Source: Squalus acanthias (Eukaryota). Taken from it: 64,000 nucleotides of DNA. The position numbers and the translations under genes were made by a program. The notes beneath the pieces were generated by a model. The model did not search any database. It was given only the letters and a program-made list of their open reading frames with translations, and was not told the origin of the DNA. The stretch covers positions 17,050,001 through 17,114,000 of the forward strand of contig CM059452.1 in assembly GCA_030390025.1 (NCBI GenBank), in the 5' to 3' direction. Shown here one piece after another: positions 39,961-59,446 of the stretch; the first letter of the stretch is position 1, and the number at the start of each line of letters is the position of its first letter.

Positions 39961-41455
39961 TAGAAACATAGAAAAATAGGCGCAGGAGTAGGCCATTCGG
40001 CCCTTCGAGCCTGCTCCGCCATTCAGTATGACCATGGCTGATCGTCTATCTCAATACCATATTCCCGCTCTCTCCACATACCCCTTGATGCCTTTTGTGT
40101 CTATAAATCTATCTATCCTCCTTCTTAAATATATTCAGTGACTTGGCATCCACAGCCTGCTGTGGTCGAGAATTCTATAGCTTCATCTCCCTCTGAGTGA
40201 AGACATTTCTCCTCATCTCAGTCCTAAATGTCCTACCCGGTATCCTGAGACTGTGACCCCTCGTTCTAGACACGCCAGCCAAGGGAAACATCCTCCCTGC
40301 ATCCAGTCTGTCTAGCCCTGACAGAATTTTATACGTTTCAATGAGTCCCCCTCTCATTCTTCTAAACTCTAGGGAATACAGGCCTAGTCGACCCACTCTC
40401 TCCTCGTACGACAGTCCTGCCATCCCAGGAATCAGTCTGGTGAGCCTTCGCTGCACTCCCTCTATGGCAAGTATATCCTTTCCTAGGTAAGGAGACCAAA
40501 ACTGCACACAGTACTCCAGGTGTTTTCTCACCAAGGCCTTGTATAACTGTAGTAATAGATGCTTGCTCCTGTACTCAAATCCTCTTGCAATGAAGGCCAA
40601 CATACCATTTGCCTTCCTAACTTCTTGCTGTACCTGCATGTTTGCTTTCAGTGACTCGTGCACATGGACACCCAGGTGCCTTTATACATCAACATTTCCC
40701 AATTTATCGCCATTTAAATAATACTCTGCCTTTCTGTTTTTCTATCGAAGTGGATAAATTCACATTTATCCAAGTTATACTGCATCTGCCATGTATTTGC
40801 CCACTCAATAAACTTGTCTAAATCGCCTTGAAGCCTCTTTTCATCCTCCTCACAACTCACAATTCCACCTAATTTCGTGTCGTCAGCAAACTTGGAAATA
40901 TTACATTTGATTCTCTCATCCAAATCATTGATATATATTGTGATTAGCTGGGGCCCCAGCATGGATCCTTGCGGTACCCCACTAGTCACCGCCTGCCACC
41001 CCGACAAAGACCCATTTATTCCTACTCTCTGTTTCCTGTCTGTTAACCAATTTTCAATCCATGCCAGTATATTACCCCCATTCCCATGTGCTTTAATTTT
41101 GCACACTAACCTCTTATGTGGGACTTTATCGAACGCCTTCTGAAAATCCAAATACACCACATCCACTAGTTCTCCCGTATCTATTCTACTAGTTACATCC
41201 TCGAAAGACTCCAGTTGGTTTGTCAAACACAATTTCCCTTTCATAAATCCCTGTTGACTTTTTTCTAATCCCCTTGATATTTTCTAAGTGTCCTGTTATC
41301 ACATCCTTTGTAATAGAATCCAGCATTTTCCCTTCTTCTGATGTTAGGCTAACCGTTCTGTACTTCCCTATTTTCTCTCCCTCCTGTTTTAAATAGTGTG
41401 GTTACATTTGCCACCCTCCAATCTGTAGAAACTGTTCCATGATCTATAGATTTTT
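39961..41455 (-). mobile_element. Younger CR1 LINE, RT domain + 3' end, with frameshifts
   Basis: DVVYLDFQKAFDKVPHKRL, SGVPQGSMLGP, ISKFADDTKLGG, LEYCVQFWSPY; TAGAAACA tail at 39961. Confidence 0.95.
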
Positions 41456-45019: not shown

Positions 45020-45390
45020 AGGTGTAGAAAATCATGAACTATTTAGATAGAGTAAATAAAGATAAGCTGTTTCCAATGGCTGAAGGGTCGATAACCAGAG
45101 GATACAGATTTAAGGTGATTGACAAAAGAACCAGAGGTGAGACGAGGAAAAACCTTTTTACACAACGAGTGGTTCGGATCTGGAATGCACTGCCTGATAG
45201 GCTGGTGGATACAGATTCAATAGTAGCCTTCAAAAGGGAATTGGAGAAATACTTGAAGGAGAAAACATTGCAGGGATATGAGGAAAGAGCAGGGGAGTGG
45301 AAACTAACTGGATTGCTCTTCGAAAGAGCCATCACAGACCCGATGCGCCGAATGGCCTCCTTCTGTGCGGTACTATTCGATGATTCTATA
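45020..45390 (+). mobile_element. CR1 LINE 3' fragment
   Basis: TRGYRFKVI...FTQRVVRIWNALP...FKRELEKYL and a GATTCTAT-like tail. Confidence 0.9.
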
Positions 45391-47524: not shown

Positions 47525-48075
47525 TAACCAAGTGGCCCACTACCCTGCTCTTTCGCCATAGCCCTATATTTTTCCCCTTCAAGTAATTATCCAATTCTCT
47601 TTTGAATGTTACTATTGAATCTGCTTCCACCACCGTTTCAGGCAGTGGATCCCAGATCACGAAAACTCGTTGTGCAAAAGAATGTTTCCTCATGTCACCT
47701 CTGGTTGATTTGCCAATCACCTTGAATCTTTGTTTTGTTGTTAACGACACTTCTGCCATTGGAAATAGTTTATCATTATTTACTCTGTCAAAAGCTTTCA
47801 TGATTGTGAACACCTCTTTCTAAACTCTTCTAACCGTCTCTGCTCTAAGGAGAACAACCCCGGCTTCTCCAATGCCTCAACATAACTGAAATCTCTCATC
47901 CCTGGTGCCATACCAGTAAATCTCTTCTGCACCGTTTCCATGGTCCTGGCATCATTCCTAAAGTGTGGTGCCCGGACATGAACGTCACACTCCAGCTGAG
48001 ACCTAATCAGTGTTTGATAAATTTTCAGCATAATTTCCTTGCTTTGGTACTTTATTTCACTCTTAATAAGGACTC
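47525..48075 (-). mobile_element. CR1 LINE 3' fragment
   Basis: VQKRFTGMAPGMRDFSY, FAQRVFVIWDPLP, FKRELDNYL. Confidence 0.88.
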
Positions 48076-53514: not shown

Positions 53515-55470
53515 AATCATACAATCGTAGAAATTTACAGCACAGAAGGAGGCCAGCGTGTCTGTGCCGGCCGAAAAAGAGCTTTCCAGCCTCATGCCAC
53601 TTTCCAGCTCTTGGTCCGTAGCCTTGCAGGTTTCGGTAATTCAAGTGCACATCCAAGTACTTTTACAATGTGATGAGGGTCTCTGCCTCTATCTTCCTTT
53701 CAGGTAGTGAGTTCCAGACCTCCACCACCCTCTGGGTGAAATAAAGTTCTCCTCAAATCCCTCTAAACCTCCTACTAATTACTTTAAATCTATGCCCCCT
53801 GGTCATTGATCTCTCTGCTAAGGTAAATAGATCCTTCCTATCCACTCTATCTAGGCCCCTCATAATTTTATACACCTCAACAACGTCGCCCCTCAGCCTT
53901 CTCTGTTTCAAAGCAAACAACGCCAGCCTATCCAATCTTTGCTCATATTCTCCAGTCCTGGCAACATACTCGTAAATATCCGCTGTACCCTCTCTACTGT
54001 AATTACTTCTATCTGTAATGTGGTGACCAGAACAGTAGGAGGTACCTTAGCTGTGGCTTAACCAATGTTTTATTTAGTTCAAACATAACCCTCCCTGCTC
54101 TTATATTATATGCCTCGGCTAATAAAGGAAACTATCCCGTAAGCCTTATTAACCACCTTATCTACCTGTCCTGCTACCTTCAGGGATCTGTGGCCATGCA
54201 CTCCAAGGATCCTCTTTTCCTCTACATTAGTTGTGTATTCCCTTGCCCTGTTAGCCCCCCCCCCCCCCCCACAAATGTATTACCTCACACTTCTCCGGAT
54301 TGATTTCTATTTACCACTTTTCTGCCCACTTGACCAATCTGTTGATATCTTCCTGCAGTCTACAGCTTTCTTCATCACTGTCAACGACACGGCCAATTTA
54401 TTTATCATCTGCAAACTTCTTAATCATGCCCCTACATTGAAGACTAACTCCTTGATATATACCACAAAAAAACAAGGGACCCATAACTGTGCCATCAGGT
54501 ACCCCACTGGAAATAAAATTCCAGTCACAAAAACACCCGTCGACCATTACCCTTTGTTTCCTGTCTCTGAGCCAATTTTGGATCCAACTTGCCACTTTCC
54601 CTTGGATCCCATGGGCTTTTACTTTTCTGACCAGACTGCCGTGTGGGATATTGTGAAAAGCCTTGCTAAAATCCATGTAAACTACATCAAACGCACTACC
54701 ATCATCAACCCTCCTTGTTACCTTCTCAAAAAATTCATACACGGTAGTCAGACTTGAACTTCTATACACACATCCATGCTGACTGTCCTTGATTAATCCG
54801 TGGTTTTCTAAGTAAAGATTAACACGATCCCTCAGGATTTTTCCAGTAATATTCCCACCACCGAGATTAGCAGACTGGAATGTAATTGCTCGCTCTTTCT
54901 TTTTCTCCGTTTCTAAACAATGATACAACTTTAGCTGTCCTCCAGTCCTCTGGCATCACACCTGTAGACAGAGTGGATTTGAAAATTATGATCAGAGTCT
55001 ACGCTTATTTCCTCCCTTGCCTCTCTTAACAGCCTGGGACACACTTCAACCGGGCCTGGCGATTTATCTACTTTCAAATATGCTCAACCCATTAATACTT
55101 CCTCTCTCACAATGTTTATCTCATCTATTATTTCAAACATCCTCCTCCGTAACTAAAATGCCTGCATCGTCCGACTCTTTTTTGAAAGCAGACGGAAAGT
55201 AATGATTAAAAACCATAACAACGTCTTCTTCCTCCACAAACAATGTACCTTTATGGTCTTTAATAAGCCCCCCTGTTTCCTTAGTTACTCTCTTGCTCTT
55301 TAAGTATTTATAAAACACCTTTGGGTTTTCATTGATGTTACTTGCCAATATTTGTTCATGCCCTCTCCTTACGTTCCTAATTTCACCCCTGCACTTTCTA
55401 TACTCTTCTAGGCTTTCTGCAGTATTTAGCTCTCTGTATCTAACATAAGCTTCCCTTTTTGCCTCAGCTT
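53515..55470 (-). mobile_element. CR1 LINE, ~2 kb ORF2 remnant
   Basis: NINENPKVFYKY, DVVYMDFSKAF, WIQNWLRDRKQRV, KFADDK, RLRGDVVEVYKIMRG. Confidence 0.93.
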
Positions 55471-55571
55471 GCCTTATTTTGTTACAGTCAGAGCTATTAA
55501 AGCTGGGTCCTTGTGTTCTAAATTGAGAGGTCGCACAACACCAGGTTATAGTCCAACAGTTTTATTTGAAA

Positions 55572-55614
55572 TCACAAGCTTTCGGAGCTATCGATTGCTC
55601 CTTCCTCAGGTGAA
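55572..55614 (-). ncRNA. Minimal type I hammerhead ribozyme motif (intact core)
   Basis: UUCAC-CUGAGGA-A-GGAGC[AAUCGAUA]GCUCC-GAAA-GCUU-GUGA: CUGANGA and GAAA cores, stem I UCAC/GUGA, stem II, palindromic AAGCUU in place of stem III as in PLE hammerheads. Confidence 0.75.
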
Positions 55615-55710
55615 AAGCCTTGCTAAAATCCATGTAAACTACATCAAATGCACTACCATCATCAACCCTCCTTGTTACCTTCTCGAAAAATTCATACACG
55701 GTAGTCAGAC

Positions 55711-55753
55711 TTCACCAGAGGAAGGAGCAATCGATAGCTCCGAAAGCTTGTGA
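55711..55753 (+). ncRNA. Hammerhead motif, second arm, core mutated (CUGA>CAGA)
   Basis: TTCAC-CAGAGGA-A-GGAGCAATCGATAGCTCC-GAAAGCTT-GTGA. Confidence 0.6.
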
Positions 55754-56189
55754 TTTCAAATAAAACTGTTGGACTATAACCTGGTGTTGTGCGACCTCTC
55801 AATTTTGTCCACCACAGTCCAACACCGGCATCTCCGCATCCTTGTGTTCTGCCATGGAGATAGATCCGCTATGTCAACTCCAGACAGCTCAGAGTCAGAT
55901 AAAGGCTTTTATCGGGTTAGTGATGATGGAGGACATTCCGACCACCCGCCCCATTACTTGAAAGGCACTCAGTCAGATGGACATTGCCCTTTCAACCAGC
56001 AGGGATCCATATTCGCATTGGTCGTGTCGCTGGTATACAGAGGTTGAATGATGTAATTGTTCAGGTTAGGCAGCTGAAGCCTCAATGCGAAGTAACTAAA
56101 TTCACAGATGACATCAAGCTAGGAGAATTATGGAATTCGCTTATGCAGACAAAATATTAAATAGAGAGCTCTCCACGGTATGCACCTAA

Positions 56190-57320
56190 TACATAGAAAT
56201 ATCTAGACGTTATAACAAGGAATCAGACCTTTAGACCCAACCAGTCAGTGTCGGCGTTTACCCTCCACACAAGCAAACAGTTCTAATCACATTTACCCGC
56301 CTTTATCCACAGCCCTTCAACCCCTTTCCTACATCCACCTCTCCAATCTAATTGTGATTGTTGATACAGTTTCTGCCCCAACCACTAAACCTGGAAGTGA
56401 ATTCCGCAGCCTCATAACTCTCTTTGTGAAGAAGTTTCTCCTGATTGCTGTTCTAATTCTCTGACATTTAATCTTGTATCTAAGTACCCTAAGAGCCCTT
56501 CGGCATTGAAAAGAGCCTGATTATATCTACCCCGTCCCATCTTTCATAATTTTAAACATTTCTATTTTATTGACCCATAATCTAAGTTATCAGAACGAAA
56601 ATTGAGCAATTTTCGCATCTTTCTTCATATTTATATTTCATCATACCAGGCAGCATTCTAGTGATCTGTGTTCTACAATCTTTAAATCCTCAATATCCAT
56701 ATTACAGCGAGGAGCCGAATACCGCACACAGTACTCTAACTGAAGTATTATTCTTACCATTACCTCTTGTTTTTATATTCTATATCTCTTATGATAAAAC
56801 CTGGAATCCCATTAGCTTTTTTTACAGCCTGATCAAGCTGCGGTGCTGCCTCACTCTTCTCTTCCACAGCACCGAGCCTACTTCCATTCAGAGAATCATT
56901 ACTATTCCTTTTACAAAAATGCATCAACTCATACTTGCTGATGTTGAATTCCATCTGCCACTTTTCAGCTCATTCCTCCATTGTATCAATCTCACTTTGC
57001 AGCTTCCGTTGGTCTTCCCAATAATTACCTCTGCCTCTTATTTTGGTAAAATGTTCAAATTTCGAAACACTCTCTTTAGGCCCAGACCCAAATCATTGAT
57101 ATACGCGGGGAACAAAGTAATCCCCAGAACTGATTCCTGTGGGATGTCTCTACCCACTCCCAACCGCTCTCAAAATAATGAGTTTTCCGTTTTCTCTCTT
57201 CTAATCTCTATTAAACCTGTGTGCTCACCTCTCCTTAATTCTGTACTCATTATCCGTTATTTAATGTCTGCTGTAGTAACTTGTCAAAGACTTTCTTAAG
57301 ATCCAGTTACATTACAAATT
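56190..57320 (-). mobile_element. Old CR1 LINE fragment
   Basis: MEFNISKYELMHF, KKANGIPGFIIRDIEYKNK; 3' tail near 56190-56260. Confidence 0.85.
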
Positions 57321-57896: not shown

Positions 57897-57939
57897 ATGC
57901 ATATTTTCTGGGTTTCGGTCCTTTTAGCCTGGTTACCAA
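57897..57939 (+). CDS. IgNAR: IgNAR leader exon
   Basis: MHIFWVSVLLAWLP + phase-1 donor A|GTAAGT at 57940; typical IgNAR signal peptide (SVLLAWLP). Confidence 0.95.
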
Positions 57940-58079
57940 GTAAGTGTTGTTTAATAAAGAGATTAAATGTTAATTGGATAAAATTGTGCGGCAGCGTCTA
58001 CATTGCGGAAATTGCCCTGCCTTTAAACTCTCGTATTGTTTCAGATACGCGATGTATTAAATATATTTTCTCCATTCAG

Positions 58080-58353
58080 ATGCCTTCGGTACAAGAGTAG
58101 ACCAAACACCAAGAACGGCAACGAAAGAGACAGGAGAATCCCTGACCATCAACTGCGTCCTAACTGATACCAGCTATGGTTTGTACAGCACATCCTGGTT
58201 CCGGAAAAATCCGGGTACAACAGACTGGGAACGCATGTCGATTGGCGGCCGATATGTCGAATCAGTCAACAAGGGAGCAAAGTCATTTTCTCTGCGAATC
58301 AAGGACCTAACAGTTGCAGACAGTGCCACGTATTATTGCAAAGCTCAAAGCTG
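58080..58353 (+). CDS. IgNAR: IgNAR V segment (germline, type IV/IIb, no non-canonical Cys)
   Basis: Acceptor TTCAG| at 58079; open frame (N)[90 protein letters not shown]; short VNAR domain with no CDR2. Confidence 0.98.
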
Positions 58354-58392
58354 CACAGCAGTGGAGGAGGCGGTCCCTGCAATACACAAACT
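58354..58392 (+). other. V 3' RSS, 23-bp spacer
   Basis: CACAGCA - 23 nt - ACACAAACT. Confidence 0.93.
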
Positions 58393-58581
58393 ATCAGCAC
58401 ACTTTGTTACAAGAACAAGGGCACTATTTATCTTTTACTTAATCATGAAGAGAAGATCCTGAGTATTTTGGAGGGATAACACTCTTGGTTATAAAAGAAA
58501 CCCTGACAAGAAGTATTGAGGTAGGAATCTGGTTTGCAGTAAGTGCCTCGACCTGAGGCTCTCGCACTAATGCACATGGGA

Positions 58582-58661
58582 CCTTTTTGTACTGGTCTCT
58601 GTGACTGTGTGGCAATCAGATACCACAGTGATGAATCTTGGATTCCCGTAATACATAAACT
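58582..58661 (+). other. IgNAR: IgNAR D1 (58610-58623, TGGCAATCAGATAC) with 12-RSS 5' and 22-RSS 3'
   Basis: CCTTTTTGT-12-GACTGTG [D1] CACAGTG-22-ACATAAACT. Confidence 0.93.
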
Positions 58662-58987
58662 GTCCCCACACCTCTTAATACAAAGTTAATACAGGTTATT
58701 CTCTCGGTGGCTAATAACCTCACGGTTAAATGCTCATTGTCTCTGTCAGACACTGGCTGACATATTAAAGCCTTTTCTCTATTAATTTCCGTGATATTTC
58801 TATCAATATTACGGTCATATTTATAATGGAACATTGATATTTCTCCAGGACTTTTATGAATGGCTGGGAATTATAACCGTCTACGGGGATCCCAATATAA
58901 AGGCAATGATTTGAATCATATTTACTGCAATTTTCAATCAATATCTTGGAATATCTGAAGGATTTTCTGTGATGTTTGCAACAATGG

Positions 58988-59055
58988 AGTTCTTGTGCTG
59001 GTGTGAAATGATGTGTATACTGGGTGACACAGTGACTCGGGCCATAGCACAAACC
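58988..59055 (+). other. IgNAR: IgNAR D2 (59016-59027, TATACTGGGTGA) with 12/12 RSSs
   Basis: AGTTCTTGT-12-TGATGTG [D2] CACAGTG-12-GCACAAACC. Confidence 0.9.
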
Positions 59056-59366
59056 TCTCCAACAGTTATCTGTTATCCTACTCATGGAGGTGGCTGCATA
59101 ATGTGCTTCTTGCTCATGGATGTTACTGCATAGAGCTTGAAATCAATTCCAGTTCGACCTTTGGTTGAAATCGATCCGCATTCCCTGATGTTAAATCAGT
59201 GGATTATCTTCTTCAGTGTTACAGGAGTTCGCATTGCAAATATTGAATGTCTGGTGGAGAGAAACTGACGGAAAATGAAGATTTACCAATGACTCCAATA
59301 TATCTGGAAGGTCCGAGGAGCGGTGATGATTTGTTGTATTAATTACCGGACCTTTGCTTCAATGAC

Positions 59367-59405
59367 CCTTTTTGAACTGGGCTGACTGGGAGCTGACTGA
59401 CTGTG
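59367..59405 (-). other. J 5' RSS, 23-bp spacer
   Basis: CCTTTTTGA - 23 nt - GACTGTG. Confidence 0.92.
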
Positions 59406-59446
59406 TTACTATGACGGAGCTGGCACCGTGCTGACTGTGAACTCTG
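59406..59446 (+). CDS. IgNAR: IgNAR J segment
   Basis: YYDGAGTVLTVNS followed by phase-1 donor G|GTAAGT at 59447. Confidence 0.97.

What the first reader, a model, noticed from the sequence alone, without database searches (positions are those of the whole stretch)
55508..55850. Penelope-like double-hammerhead cassette that captured a copy of neighbouring DNA
Seen: a 319-bp insertion bounded by a perfect 12-bp TSD, made of two inverted 95-bp arms that each carry a hammerhead motif at their inner end. The 96-bp spacer (55615-55710) is a same-orientation copy of 54658-54753, 957 bp away in the adjacent decayed CR1. The two differ at only 2 positions, both CpG transitions, and share the odd local sequence TTCATACACGGTAGTCAGAC. 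There is microhomology at both junctions (GTGAA left, TT right). Known: PLE termini encode minimal hammerheads and often have an inverted 5' terminal copy. Inference: integration involved a microhomology-guided switch onto nearby chromosomal DNA and back, so each insertion may store a locus-specific 'spacer'. A read-through RNA would fold into a 95-bp hairpin with captured genomic sequence in the loop. If general, this is a ribozyme-flanked local sequence-capture mechanism that I have not seen described.
Basis: partly seen in the sequence, partly recalled or inferred. Interest (0 to 1): 0.88.

Follow-up and report, generated by a model that had tools for sequence, protein, structure and literature searches.

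The report
Penelope-type hairpin insertion with locally copied filler
A small retroelement inserted as two inverted copies of its ribozyme-bearing end, and the gap between them was filled by copying 96 bases from DNA about 1 kb away; it looks like a single event that leaves a clear footprint of how such elements integrate, not a new capture system.

Summary
There is a 319-bp insert (55520-55838) between perfect 12-bp target duplications. It has two 95-nt head-to-head arms (94/95 identical) and a 33-nt A+C-rich tail on the right arm only. The 96-nt spacer matches 54658-54753 at 94/96, and both differences are CpG transitions. The junctions carry GTGAA and TT microhomology.

The donor is a LINE reverse-transcriptase fragment from a high-copy family. 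The spacer shares that copy's rare letters, so the neighbouring copy is the source.

The inverted arms, the one-sided tail and the TSD are published hallmarks of Penelope-like elements (PLEs). They fit the in vitro finding that a PLE protein primes on both target strands from two start sites.

Best reading: two convergent cDNAs were bridged by microhomology-primed copying of nearby DNA.

Other copies join arm to arm with at most a few letters between. Host DNA captured between PLE repeats, and templated insertions at L1 junctions, are already in print.

First-stage notes report similar hairpins elsewhere in this genome, some with captured inserts. None has been followed up. No listed read or contig bridged the arm-spacer junctions.

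The parts
55508..55519 (.). Left copy of the 12-bp target-site duplication (TCCTTGTGTTCT)
   Evidence: (family D4, 100%)
55520..55614 (-). Left arm. It is 95 nt of the element's 5' part, sense on the minus strand, and starts at the tail-less (proximal) end
   Evidence: 94/95 to the right arm
55572..55613 (-). Minimal hammerhead motif with an intact CUGAGGA box: UCAC-CUGAGGA-A-GGAGC-loop8-GCUCC-GAA-AGCU-U-GUGA
   Evidence: Read. Pattern matches. No Rfam match
55615..55710 (+). 96-nt spacer (filler), a same-orientation copy of 54658-54753
   Evidence: 94/96. It shares the donor's rare letters (table 3) and rare residues Y, F, H
55711..55805 (+). Right arm, 95 nt, sense on the plus strand. Its hammerhead box is mutated to CAGAGGA (motif at 55712-55753)
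55806..55838 (+). 33-nt A+C-rich 'tail', present at this end only
   Evidence: A 8, C 15 of 33. Compared with the 30-40-bp PLE tail in PMC8557442 and PMC11167929
55839..55850 (.). Right copy of the 12-bp target-site duplication
54653..54755 (+). Donor stretch: core 54658-54753, plus GTGAA (54653-54657) and TT (54754-54755) shared with the arm ends
   Evidence: (family D1, 103 nt, 98%)
54398..54928 (-). Decayed LINE reverse-transcriptase ORF that contains the donor. It belongs to a high-copy family
   Evidence: ORF; RVT_1, E 6.3e-11; thousands of contigs laid

Best explanation
This is one integration event of a short Penelope-like (PLE) terminal unit.

Inferred steps:
1. The target was cut on both strands 12 bp apart.
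2. Both 3' ends primed reverse transcription on element RNA. The bottom strand started at the distal start site, giving the right arm with its 33-nt tail. The top strand started at the proximal start site, giving the left arm without a tail.
3. Both cDNAs ran to the same 5' end of the template (TTCACC...). Their 3' ends were then identical (...GGTGAA-3') and could not pair.
4. One end annealed by microhomology to the plus strand of the left flank about 0.9 kb away, probably after that strand was exposed by resection.
5. It copied about 96 nt, let go, and paired with the other cDNA end. The microhomologies were TT/AA at one junction and GTGAA/TTCAC at the other.
6. Fill-in and ligation gave arm-spacer-arm inside one TSD.

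Shown: the anatomy, the local donor and the microhomologies.

Inferred: priming on both strands, the timing of the filler at integration, a DNA rather than RNA template, and the polymerase (the element's RT or a host repair polymerase such as Pol theta).

The spacer is a by-product of joining. It is not a stored 'spacer' with a function.
For: - Anatomy.
- PLE hallmarks in print: an inverted 5'-truncated copy at the 5' end and a 30-40-bp tail at one end only (PMC8557442, passages). An inverted pLTR, a 31-bp tail and a 9-bp TSD in A. vaga (PMC3846280, passages).
- In vitro, a PLE protein cleaves and extends both strands. RT starts at two adjacent internal sites in an AC-rich stem-loop, and the tail is the stretch between them (PMC11167929, section 3 read in full). 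Here the two arms differ by exactly a 33-nt A+C-rich tail.
- Local donor: the family majority has C at 54701, where donor and spacer (55658) have A (121 and 83 contigs in X1). It has C at 54724 where both have T, and T at 54744 where both have G (table 3).
- Ten X5 contigs read ATCAAGTT... where donor and spacer read ATACACGG (table 7).
- Among 11 distant RT relatives, 0 have Y, 0 have F and 0 have H at the three local residues that the spacer shares.
- The G of GTGAA at 54655 is itself a rare local letter (family C, 88 contigs in X1). The 5-nt microhomology therefore exists only in this copy.
- Other copies of the element end at 55611-55614 next to heterogeneous A/T-rich sequence (21 contigs in X1, 11 in X5, 4 in X6, table 7). 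This fits a preferred 5' end.
- Divergence of the arms (1/95) and of the spacer (2/96) fits a single event.
Against: - None of the 32 contig pieces shown, out of more than 50,000 laid, bridges an arm-spacer junction (table 8). The structure rests on the assembly and its internal logic.
- Only this one example was verified.
- Nothing dates the filler relative to the integration.
- A fold-back (self-priming) route was proposed for PLE palindromes (PMC3846280) and is not excluded for the arms.
- The target is not AT-rich and has no ATT at the nicks, unlike the in vitro preference.
- No RT/GIY-YIG partner is in the window.
- No Rfam model reports the hammerhead. The two boxes alone are expected 0.27 times by chance in the window.
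- The upstream sequences seen at the arm end in other copies are T-rich and only 55-67% consistent. The 'defined 5' end' is therefore likely, not proven.
Confidence: 0.6

Rival explanations
1. Same integration, but the filler was copied from RNA. The top-strand cDNA end (...GGTGAA-3') jumped with 5-nt homology onto a local minus-strand transcript that runs through this LINE copy. The element's RT copied 96 nt, then jumped onto the other cDNA.
For: - The template polarity fits. A plus-strand product needs a minus-strand template, which is LINE-sense.
- RT template switching to other RNAs during TPRT is documented for L1 (PMC13174262 and PMC11702581, passages).
- A nascent local transcript would explain the proximity.
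- Run X6, guessed to be RNA, holds a contig over 55806-55943 with 2 other letters (table 8).
Against: - X6's RNA label is only a guess, and DNA can be present in it.
- X6 has zero depth in 2 of the 5 low-copy bins, 55137-55185 and 55186-55234 (table 2).
- The jump landed inside the transcript, not at a 3' end.
- Nothing shows that this decayed copy is transcribed.
Confidence: 0.2
2. The insertion first formed a perfect or near-perfect roughly 220-bp palindrome. It later broke at its centre and was repaired by microhomology-mediated end joining with a templated insertion from nearby DNA.
For: - Zero-spacer or few-letter head-to-head junctions exist in other copies, for example 55614 joined to 55729/55732 with only the arm's own letters between, in X1 and X5 (tables 5, 5c).
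- Microhomology at both junctions and a nearby donor are also the signature of end-joining repair.
- From recall: long palindromes are unstable and acquire central asymmetry.
Against: - Both arms are complete to within 5 nt of the same terminus, which other copies also use as their end. A centre break with end processing would usually remove bases.
- The divergence figures give no sign of a later event, though they have little power.
Confidence: 0.12
3. One reading: capture of a local sequence between ribozyme-bearing arms is a regular or functional step of this element's integration, so each insertion stores a locus-specific spacer.
For: Unchecked first-stage notes from the same genome:
- an inverted Penelope pair enclosing an IgM CH1 fragment (s1-889990)
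- a Tx1 enclosed by Penelope termini in one TSD (s1-889742)
- an 18-kb duplication capped by Penelope termini (s1-890630)
- a Penelope insertion that copied 63 bp of its own flank (s1-888153)

In A. vaga, Pen1 copies carry unrelated 0.9-1.5-kb host spacers (PMC3846280).
Against: - Other copies join arm to arm with 0-29 letters between (tables 5, 5c; 15 of 224 joints and 12 of 173 'letters between' rows were shown).
- Other unchecked notes describe 216-217-bp, 402-bp and 1308-bp hairpins with no spacer.
- Nothing points to a function. The right-arm ribozyme core is mutated.
Confidence: 0.06
4. The structure is an assembly artefact, or it is two independent insertions flanking a pre-existing LINE fragment.
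For: - Inverted PLE structures are known to trouble assemblies (PMC8557442).
- No bridging contig was shown.
Against: - One perfect 12-bp TSD brackets the whole unit.
- Both arms end at the same element position, and the tail is at one end only.
- Two insertions would each need their own TSD.
- An artefact would not create CpG-decayed copies with clean microhomology junctions.
- An independent sample (X5) holds 0.45 of the stretch's sampled words.
Confidence: 0.02

Closest known systems
Penelope-like element insertions with an inverted 5'-truncated copy and a one-sided 30-40-bp tail (Evgen'ev & Arkhipova; Craig et al. 2021, PMC8557442; Arkhipova et al. 2013, PMC3846280)
   Same: Head-to-head inverted repeats, a tail at one end only (33 nt here), a TSD of about 10 bp, and a hammerhead motif in the terminal repeat.
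   Different: - Only about 128 nt of the element is present, with no ORF.
- The junction between the inverted copies holds a 96-nt copy of DNA lying 957 bp away. Published cases have a palindromic or overlapping junction.
Host DNA captured between Penelope pLTRs in Adineta vaga (Arkhipova et al. 2013, PMC3846280)
   Same: Sequence unrelated to the element lies between the terminal repeats and inside one TSD.
   Different: - In A. vaga the captured pieces are 0.9-1.5-kb spacers or whole intron-containing genes, mostly between direct pLTRs.
- They are explained by mobilisation in trans. No donor, distance or junction homology appears in the passages I read.
- Here the piece is short and lies between inverted arms. 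Its donor sits 957 bp away, with microhomology at both junctions.
Two-strand priming by the Anolis PLE protein PAc in vitro (Frangieh et al. 2024, PMC11167929)
   Same: Both target strands are extended. There are two adjacent internal RT start sites in an AC-rich region, and the tail is the stretch between them. This predicts one arm with a tail and one without, as seen here.
   Different: - That is an in vitro result with a different element.
- The joining of the two products was not studied.
- PAc prefers ATT / AT-rich targets, and this target is not AT-rich.
L1 twin priming, RT template switching and templated insertions at L1 insertion sites (PMC11702581; PMC13174262)
   Same: Two reverse-transcription reactions start from the two ends of one break. 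There are template switches before joining, and templated insertions at the junction.
   Different: - Classical twin priming inverts a different, adjacent part of one RNA. Here both arms copy the same 95 nt.
- The enzyme family is different (PLE, not L1).
Templated insertions of microhomology-mediated end joining or MMBIR (general repair literature; search listing only)
   Same: A short copy of nearby sequence sits at a junction, with 2-5-nt microhomology at both sides. The donor is within resection range and in the orientation expected for copying from the other end's single strand.
   Different: - From recall: 96 nt from about 0.9 kb away is long and distant for typical Pol theta inserts.
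- The ends being joined are cDNAs.
Animal non-LTR retrozymes (PMC7229834; bioRxiv 10.64898/2026.07.22.740005, abstracts only)
   Same: Short, non-coding, PLE-related units that carry type I hammerheads.
   Different: Retrozymes are tandem direct repeats that yield circular RNAs. Here there is one inverted pair and no tandem copy in the window.

Membership tests
Penelope-like element (terminal-repeat-derived insertion) | Inverted 5'-truncated copy adjacent at the 5' end (head-to-head) | tested here: met
   The arms 55520-55614(-) and 55711-55805(+) match at 94/95, with their 5' ends facing each other. The feature is as stated in PMC8557442.
Penelope-like element (terminal-repeat-derived insertion) | [quoted passage not shown] | tested here: met
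   A 33-nt tail at 55806-55838 is on the right arm only and is 70% A+C. Compared.
Penelope-like element (terminal-repeat-derived insertion) | Target-site duplication around the whole unit | tested here: met
   12/12. A. vaga examples have 8-10 bp.
Penelope-like element (terminal-repeat-derived insertion) | Family encodes an RT plus GIY-YIG endonuclease | not testable with these tools
   There is no other copy of the element in the window, and no genome of this organism could be searched. An unchecked note (s1-888102) reports an intact Neptune-type element elsewhere in the genome.
Penelope-like element (terminal-repeat-derived insertion) | Preference for AT-rich targets / cleavage at ATT | tested here: inconclusive
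   The target TCCTTGTGTTCT has 5 of 12 G+C and no ATT at either nick. One site cannot test a preference.
Hammerhead ribozyme, minimal PLE type (Cervera & de la Pena 2014) | CUGANGA and GAAA boxes | tested here: met
   The left arm has CUGAGGA ... GAAA. The right arm has CAGAGGA, so the feature is not met there. The family in organism C has CUGAUGA (table 7). The boxes alone are expected 0.27 times per window.
Hammerhead ribozyme, minimal PLE type (Cervera & de la Pena 2014) | [quoted passage not shown] | tested here: met
   A-GGAGC/GCUCC, read. The features are as listed in PMC4209133. Family indels cluster in the helix II loop at 55589-55594 (table 4).
Hammerhead ribozyme, minimal PLE type (Cervera & de la Pena 2014) | Palindromic 15.2-16.2 (dimer helix III) and a short helix I (4-5 bp) | tested here: met
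   AGCU within AAGCUU, and UCAC/GUGA (helix I also appears in the fold).
Hammerhead ribozyme, minimal PLE type (Cervera & de la Pena 2014) | Match to a curated covariance model | tested here: not met
   Rfam gave 0 matches at gathering in the window. None of 4 matches at E<=10 in 55300-56000 is a hammerhead.
Hammerhead ribozyme, minimal PLE type (Cervera & de la Pena 2014) | Self-cleavage | not testable with these tools
   Needs an in vitro assay, most likely as a dimer or with the element's protein.
Templated insertion by microhomology-primed copying (RT template switch or end-joining polymerase) | Filler nearly identical to a sequence close to the junction, and not equally matched by other copies | tested here: met
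   94/96 to 54658-54753, with no other hit in the window. The rare letters are shared. Genome-wide exclusion rests on contigs of 4 runs, which show presence, not absence.
Templated insertion by microhomology-primed copying (RT template switch or end-joining polymerase) | Microhomology at both junctions | tested here: met
   GTGAA (5 nt) and TT (2 nt).
Templated insertion by microhomology-primed copying (RT template switch or end-joining polymerase) | Identity of the polymerase and of the template (DNA or RNA) | not testable with these tools
   No data bear on this.
Non-LTR retrozyme | Tandem direct repeats of the hammerhead-bearing unit | tested here: not met
   The window has only one inverted pair and no direct copy.
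L1-type twin priming (5' inversion) | The inverted segment derives from a different, adjacent part of the same RNA | tested here: not met
   Both arms copy the same 95 nt.

The most novel reading that the evidence does not exclude
In this shark genome, PLE integration may recurrently bridge its two convergent cDNAs by copying short stretches of nucleic acid lying near the target.

If so, a measurable fraction of the thousands of head-to-head PLE insertions would carry a locally templated 'barcode'. These fillers would be an in vivo record of the unsolved joining step of PLE transposition. They would also be a route for short-range duplication and shuffling of host sequence, including immune-gene fragments.

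This case and four unchecked first-stage notes point that way: s1-888153, s1-889990, s1-889742 and s1-890630.
Probability: 0.25. Interest if true: 0.65.

Novelty: new variant of a known kind. Interest (0 to 1): 0.45.

Why it matters
How Penelope-like elements make their inverted repeats and finish integration is still open. The only biochemical study stops at the extension of both strands.

This insertion is a clean natural product that fits that result. One arm starts at each of two start sites 33 nt apart. Both arms end at the same template end. The joint is resolved by a detour onto DNA 0.9 kb away, with readable microhomologies.

If such fillers recur, a survey of one shark genome could show several things. 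These include which strand and side serve as template, how far resection reaches, and whether the element's RT or host repair does the joining. It would also show how PLEs duplicate small pieces of host sequence.

As a single event it is a well-resolved example, not a new mechanism.

Tried and rejected
- **Rfam.** No hammerhead at gathering or at E<=10. The MIR8007 match (63.9 bits against a gathering score of 195) is just the long hairpin.
- **Folds of single arms.** They are not more stable than shuffles (z -1.56 and -0.37).
- **Pattern searches.** The specific pattern was derived from the sequence itself, so it is no test. The generic two-box pattern has a chance expectation of 0.27.
- **Other copies in the window.** None of the arm or the spacer. 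The LINE flank has only one weak relative: 54548-54688 against 41023-41163, 68% over 144 nt.
- **Metagenome scan.** An 18-mer of the arm gave 4 loci. All are chance matches: 18-20 identical letters in three, and an 18-letter exact match inside a 38-nt stretch at 82% in L003. This is no route to other copies.
- **Protein searches.** The 45-aa ORF across the spacer/left-arm junction had no candidate. This blank says little, given the length limits of that search. For the 176-aa LINE ORF, 99 proteins passed E<=1e-10 among 115 candidates. The best identity is 61%, so there are no near-identical copies in that collection.
- **Transduction from a source element beside the donor.** Rejected, because no element copy lies near 54653-54755.
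- **Composite made elsewhere and transposed here.** Rejected, because the spacer carries this LINE copy's rare letters.
- **Two independent insertions.** Rejected, because a single TSD brackets the unit.
- **Fold-back self-copying of one cDNA as the origin of the left arm.** Judged less likely. Self-copying should run on through the tail, yet the left arm stops exactly at the tail boundary.
- **The search of earlier findings by sequence.** Blank, which means nothing.
- **Other inverted repeat in the window.** The only other large one (45020-45265 / 47570-47815) is two LINE 3' ends facing each other.
- **Supplementary files.** I did not open the supplements of PMC4209133, PMC11167929 and PMC3846280. 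Their figures may hold vertebrate hammerhead families, or junction details that bear on the claim that a locally templated filler is not in print. That claim rests on searches and on the passages read.
Full report
**1. What is there**

The sequence at 55400-55950 and the repeat search confirm the anatomy. TCCTTGTGTTCT stands at 55508-55519 and again at 55839-55850, 12 of 12. Between the two copies lie 319 bp.

Bases 55520-55614 are the reverse complement of 55711-55805 at 94 of 95 positions. Past 95 nt the match is sporadic, so the 102-nt arms are an over-extension. The right arm runs on for 33 nt (55806-55838; A 8, C 15, G 5, T 5) that the left arm lacks.

The 96 nt between the arms (55615-55710) equal 54658-54753 in the same orientation, offset 957, at 94 of 96. 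The two differences are 54692 C / 55649 T and 54728 A / 55685 G. Both are CpG transitions, one on each copy.

The similarity extends over GTGAA on the left and TT on the right. These letters also belong to the arm ends.

The window has no N, and blastn found no other copy of the arm or the spacer (word 7, E<=1e-3). As RNA the insert folds into the expected long hairpin: -183.8 kcal/mol, z -24.6, with 0 of 100 shuffles as stable.

**2. The hammerhead**

Rfam reports nothing at gathering in the whole window. Of 4 matches at E<=10 in 55300-56000, none is a hammerhead.

Read by eye, the left arm (minus strand, 55613-55572) gives UCAC-CUGAGGA-A-GGAGC-AAUCGAUA-GCUCC-GAA-AGCU-U-GUGA. This meets the features that Cervera and de la Pena list for minimal PLE hammerheads (PMC4209133, passages):
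- the two boxes
- a G10.1-C11.1 pair
- palindromic 15.2-16.2
- a helix I of 4 bp

Three caveats apply. The two boxes alone are weak evidence: 1 match against 0.27 expected, and 24 of 100 shuffles have at least one. The right arm reads CAGAGGA, so a core base is changed. Cleavage is untested.

Support comes from relatives. Contigs from another organism (X8) read ...TTCACCTGATGAAGGAGCAGC followed by GCTCCGAAAGC, with the canonical box and the same helix II stem. Family indels cluster in the helix II loop at 55589-55594 (tables 4 and 7).

**3. The donor**

54398-54928 on the minus strand is a decayed reverse-transcriptase ORF (RVT_1, E 6.3e-11). The other 5 of the 6 ORFs I submitted had no Pfam family. 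I did not test the clade name CR1.

I laid contigs of four runs on 54500-55950 at 85% likeness. Two runs were individuals of the window's organism, one was a run guessed to be RNA, and one was another organism.
- The LINE parts (54500-55136 and 55284-55528) and the arms attract thousands of contigs.
- 55137-55283 and 55872-55950 are low-copy.

So the LINE family is abundant, and the refutation test 'other copies match as well' is a real one.

The test comes out in favour of the local copy. Nearly all laid depth differs from the window at three positions where the spacer carries the window's letter:

| Donor position | Window letter | Family letter | Contigs in X1 | Spacer position | Spacer letter |
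|---|---|---|---|---|---|
| 54701 | A | C | 121 | 55658 | A (family C in 83 X1 contigs) |
| 54724 | T | C | 82 | 55681 | T |
| 54744 | G | T | 12 | 55701 | G |

Further points:
- Ten X5 contigs diverge at 54737 and read ATCAAGTTAGTCAGAC..., where donor and spacer read ATACACGGTAGTCAGAC (table 7).
- The contig pieces listed over the donor carry 14-27 other letters in 125-188, which is about 85-90% identity. Only the longest pieces are listed, so this is not a ranking by identity (table 8).

At the protein level, 11 distant relatives (at most 61% identical) have V (11 of 11) and D (10 of 11), and none has Y, at positions where the local copy and the spacer have F, H and Y.

The G at 54655 that makes GTGAA is itself a rare local letter (family C, 88 contigs in X1). 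The 5-nt microhomology therefore exists only in this copy.

Contigs show presence, not absence. A twin copy elsewhere is not strictly excluded.

**4. What kind of insertion**

Craig et al. 2021 (PMC8557442, passages) state two things about PLE insertions. They often carry an inverted 5'-truncated copy at the 5' end, and a 30-40-bp tail is often present at one end only.

Arkhipova et al. 2013 (PMC3846280, passages) describe the same in a rotifer, with a 31-bp tail and 8-10-bp TSDs.

Frangieh et al. 2024 (PMC11167929, main text read) show three things in vitro:
- A PLE protein cleaves and extends both target strands.
- Reverse transcription starts at two adjacent internal sites in an AC-rich stem-loop.
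- The tail is the stretch between those two sites.

The insertion here is what that predicts. One arm starts at the distal site with a 33-nt A+C-rich tail, and one arm starts at the proximal site.

Both arms stop within 5 nt of the same element position. Other copies also end there, next to heterogeneous A/T-rich sequence. Loose ends at 55611-55614 number 21 contigs in X1, 11 in X5 and 4 in X6, with agreement 0.55-0.89. That points to a preferred template 5' end but does not prove it.

**5. How the spacer arose (inferred)**

Two cDNAs that both end ...GGTGAA-3' cannot pair with each other. Suppose the bottom-strand cDNA end anneals through AA to the TT at 54754-54755 on the plus strand of the left flank. 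That strand becomes single-stranded once the left end is resected by about 0.9 kb.

The cDNA would then copy leftward to 54653, and its new 3' end would be ...TTCAC. That end pairs over 5 bp with the other cDNA's GTGAA. Fill-in would complete the unit.

The mirror route is equally possible on the sequence. In it the top-strand cDNA primes with GTGAA on a minus-strand template, which may be an RNA running through the LINE.

A later break at the centre of a perfect palindrome, repaired with a templated insertion, is a third route. The intact arm ends speak mildly against it.

Fold-back self-copying, as proposed for PLE palindromes, would not explain why the left arm stops exactly at the tail boundary.

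**6. Is it general?**

In one search, other copies join the left arm to the right arm directly, or with 0-29 letters between. For example, 55614 joins to 55729/55732 with only the arm's own GGAAGGAG(CA) between, in both individuals. 55567 joins to 55758 symmetrically.

Only 15 of 224 joints and 12 of 173 'letters between' rows were shown. Some joints at the self-complementary helix II (55588 to 55737) are mapping artefacts of single copies.

First-stage notes for this genome are all unchecked, and none has been followed up.
- Without spacers, they list hairpins of 216-217 bp, 402 bp, about 460 bp (9 kb beyond this window) and 1308 bp.
- With enclosed material, they list an IgM CH1 fragment, a Tx1 element, an 18-kb duplication, and a 63-bp inverted copy of the element's own flank.

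I could not read those windows. So recurrence stays open. 'Every insertion stores a spacer' is contradicted.

**7. Novelty**

Capture of unrelated host DNA between Penelope repeats inside a TSD is in print (PMC3846280). So are templated insertions, and twin priming combined with template switching, at L1 insertion sites (PMC11702581, passages; PMC13174262, passages).

My searches for PLEs together with template switching and microhomology found one general review holding all three terms. The PLE papers I read gave no donor, distance or junction homology for captured pieces. Supplements were not opened.

I therefore rate this as a new variant of a known kind. It is a PLE head-to-head insertion whose junction carries a short filler copied from an identified donor 957 bp away.

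**8. Limits**
- None of the listed contigs bridges an arm-spacer junction (32 of more than 50,000 pieces shown). Read-level support for the structure is therefore missing.
- Run X5, from another sample and study, holds 0.45 of the stretch's sampled words. That does not resolve the junctions.
- One X6 contig (55806-55943) has 13 leading letters that do not match the right arm (table 8). This is unexplained and may be a contig-graph effect.
- The organism is coded in my calls.

Noticed in passing
window 45020-45265 and 47570-47815: A 246-nt inverted repeat, 80% complementary, with 2304 nt between the arms. ORFs on both arms read like LINE ORF2 C-terminal ends in opposite orientation. It looks like two LINE 3' ends facing each other, which is ordinary.
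   Followed up: partly
window 55984-56160 (+), 56760-56954 (-), 57038-57163 (-): Short ORFs that look like further LINE RT fragments in both orientations, to the right of the insertion. Pfam gave no family for them at E<=0.01. The region is a mosaic of LINE debris just upstream of the IgNAR cluster that other readers noted at 57897-59446.
   Followed up: partly
window 55806-55943: A 151-nt contig of run X6, which is guessed to be RNA, covers the tail, the TSD and the low-copy right flank with 2 other letters. Its first 13 letters do not match the right arm (table 8). It could be low-level transcription, DNA in the run, a contig-graph effect or an allelic difference.
   Followed up: no
window 55589-55594 and 55729-55732 (helix II loop of the hammerhead): Across family contigs of two organisms, the indels (1-4 letters left out, a T put in) cluster in the loop of helix II, while the stem is kept (table 4). 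The window's copy has an 8-nt loop containing ATCGAT. The other organism has AGC.
   Followed up: partly
window 55137-55283: A low-copy stretch inside the otherwise high-copy LINE. Depth falls from about 1e5 to about 3e2-1.5e3 in X1 (table 2). It may be a locally diverged or rearranged part of this LINE copy.
   Followed up: no
window 54548-54688 vs 41023-41163: The only other DNA-level relative of the donor LINE in the window, at 68% over 144 nt.
   Followed up: no
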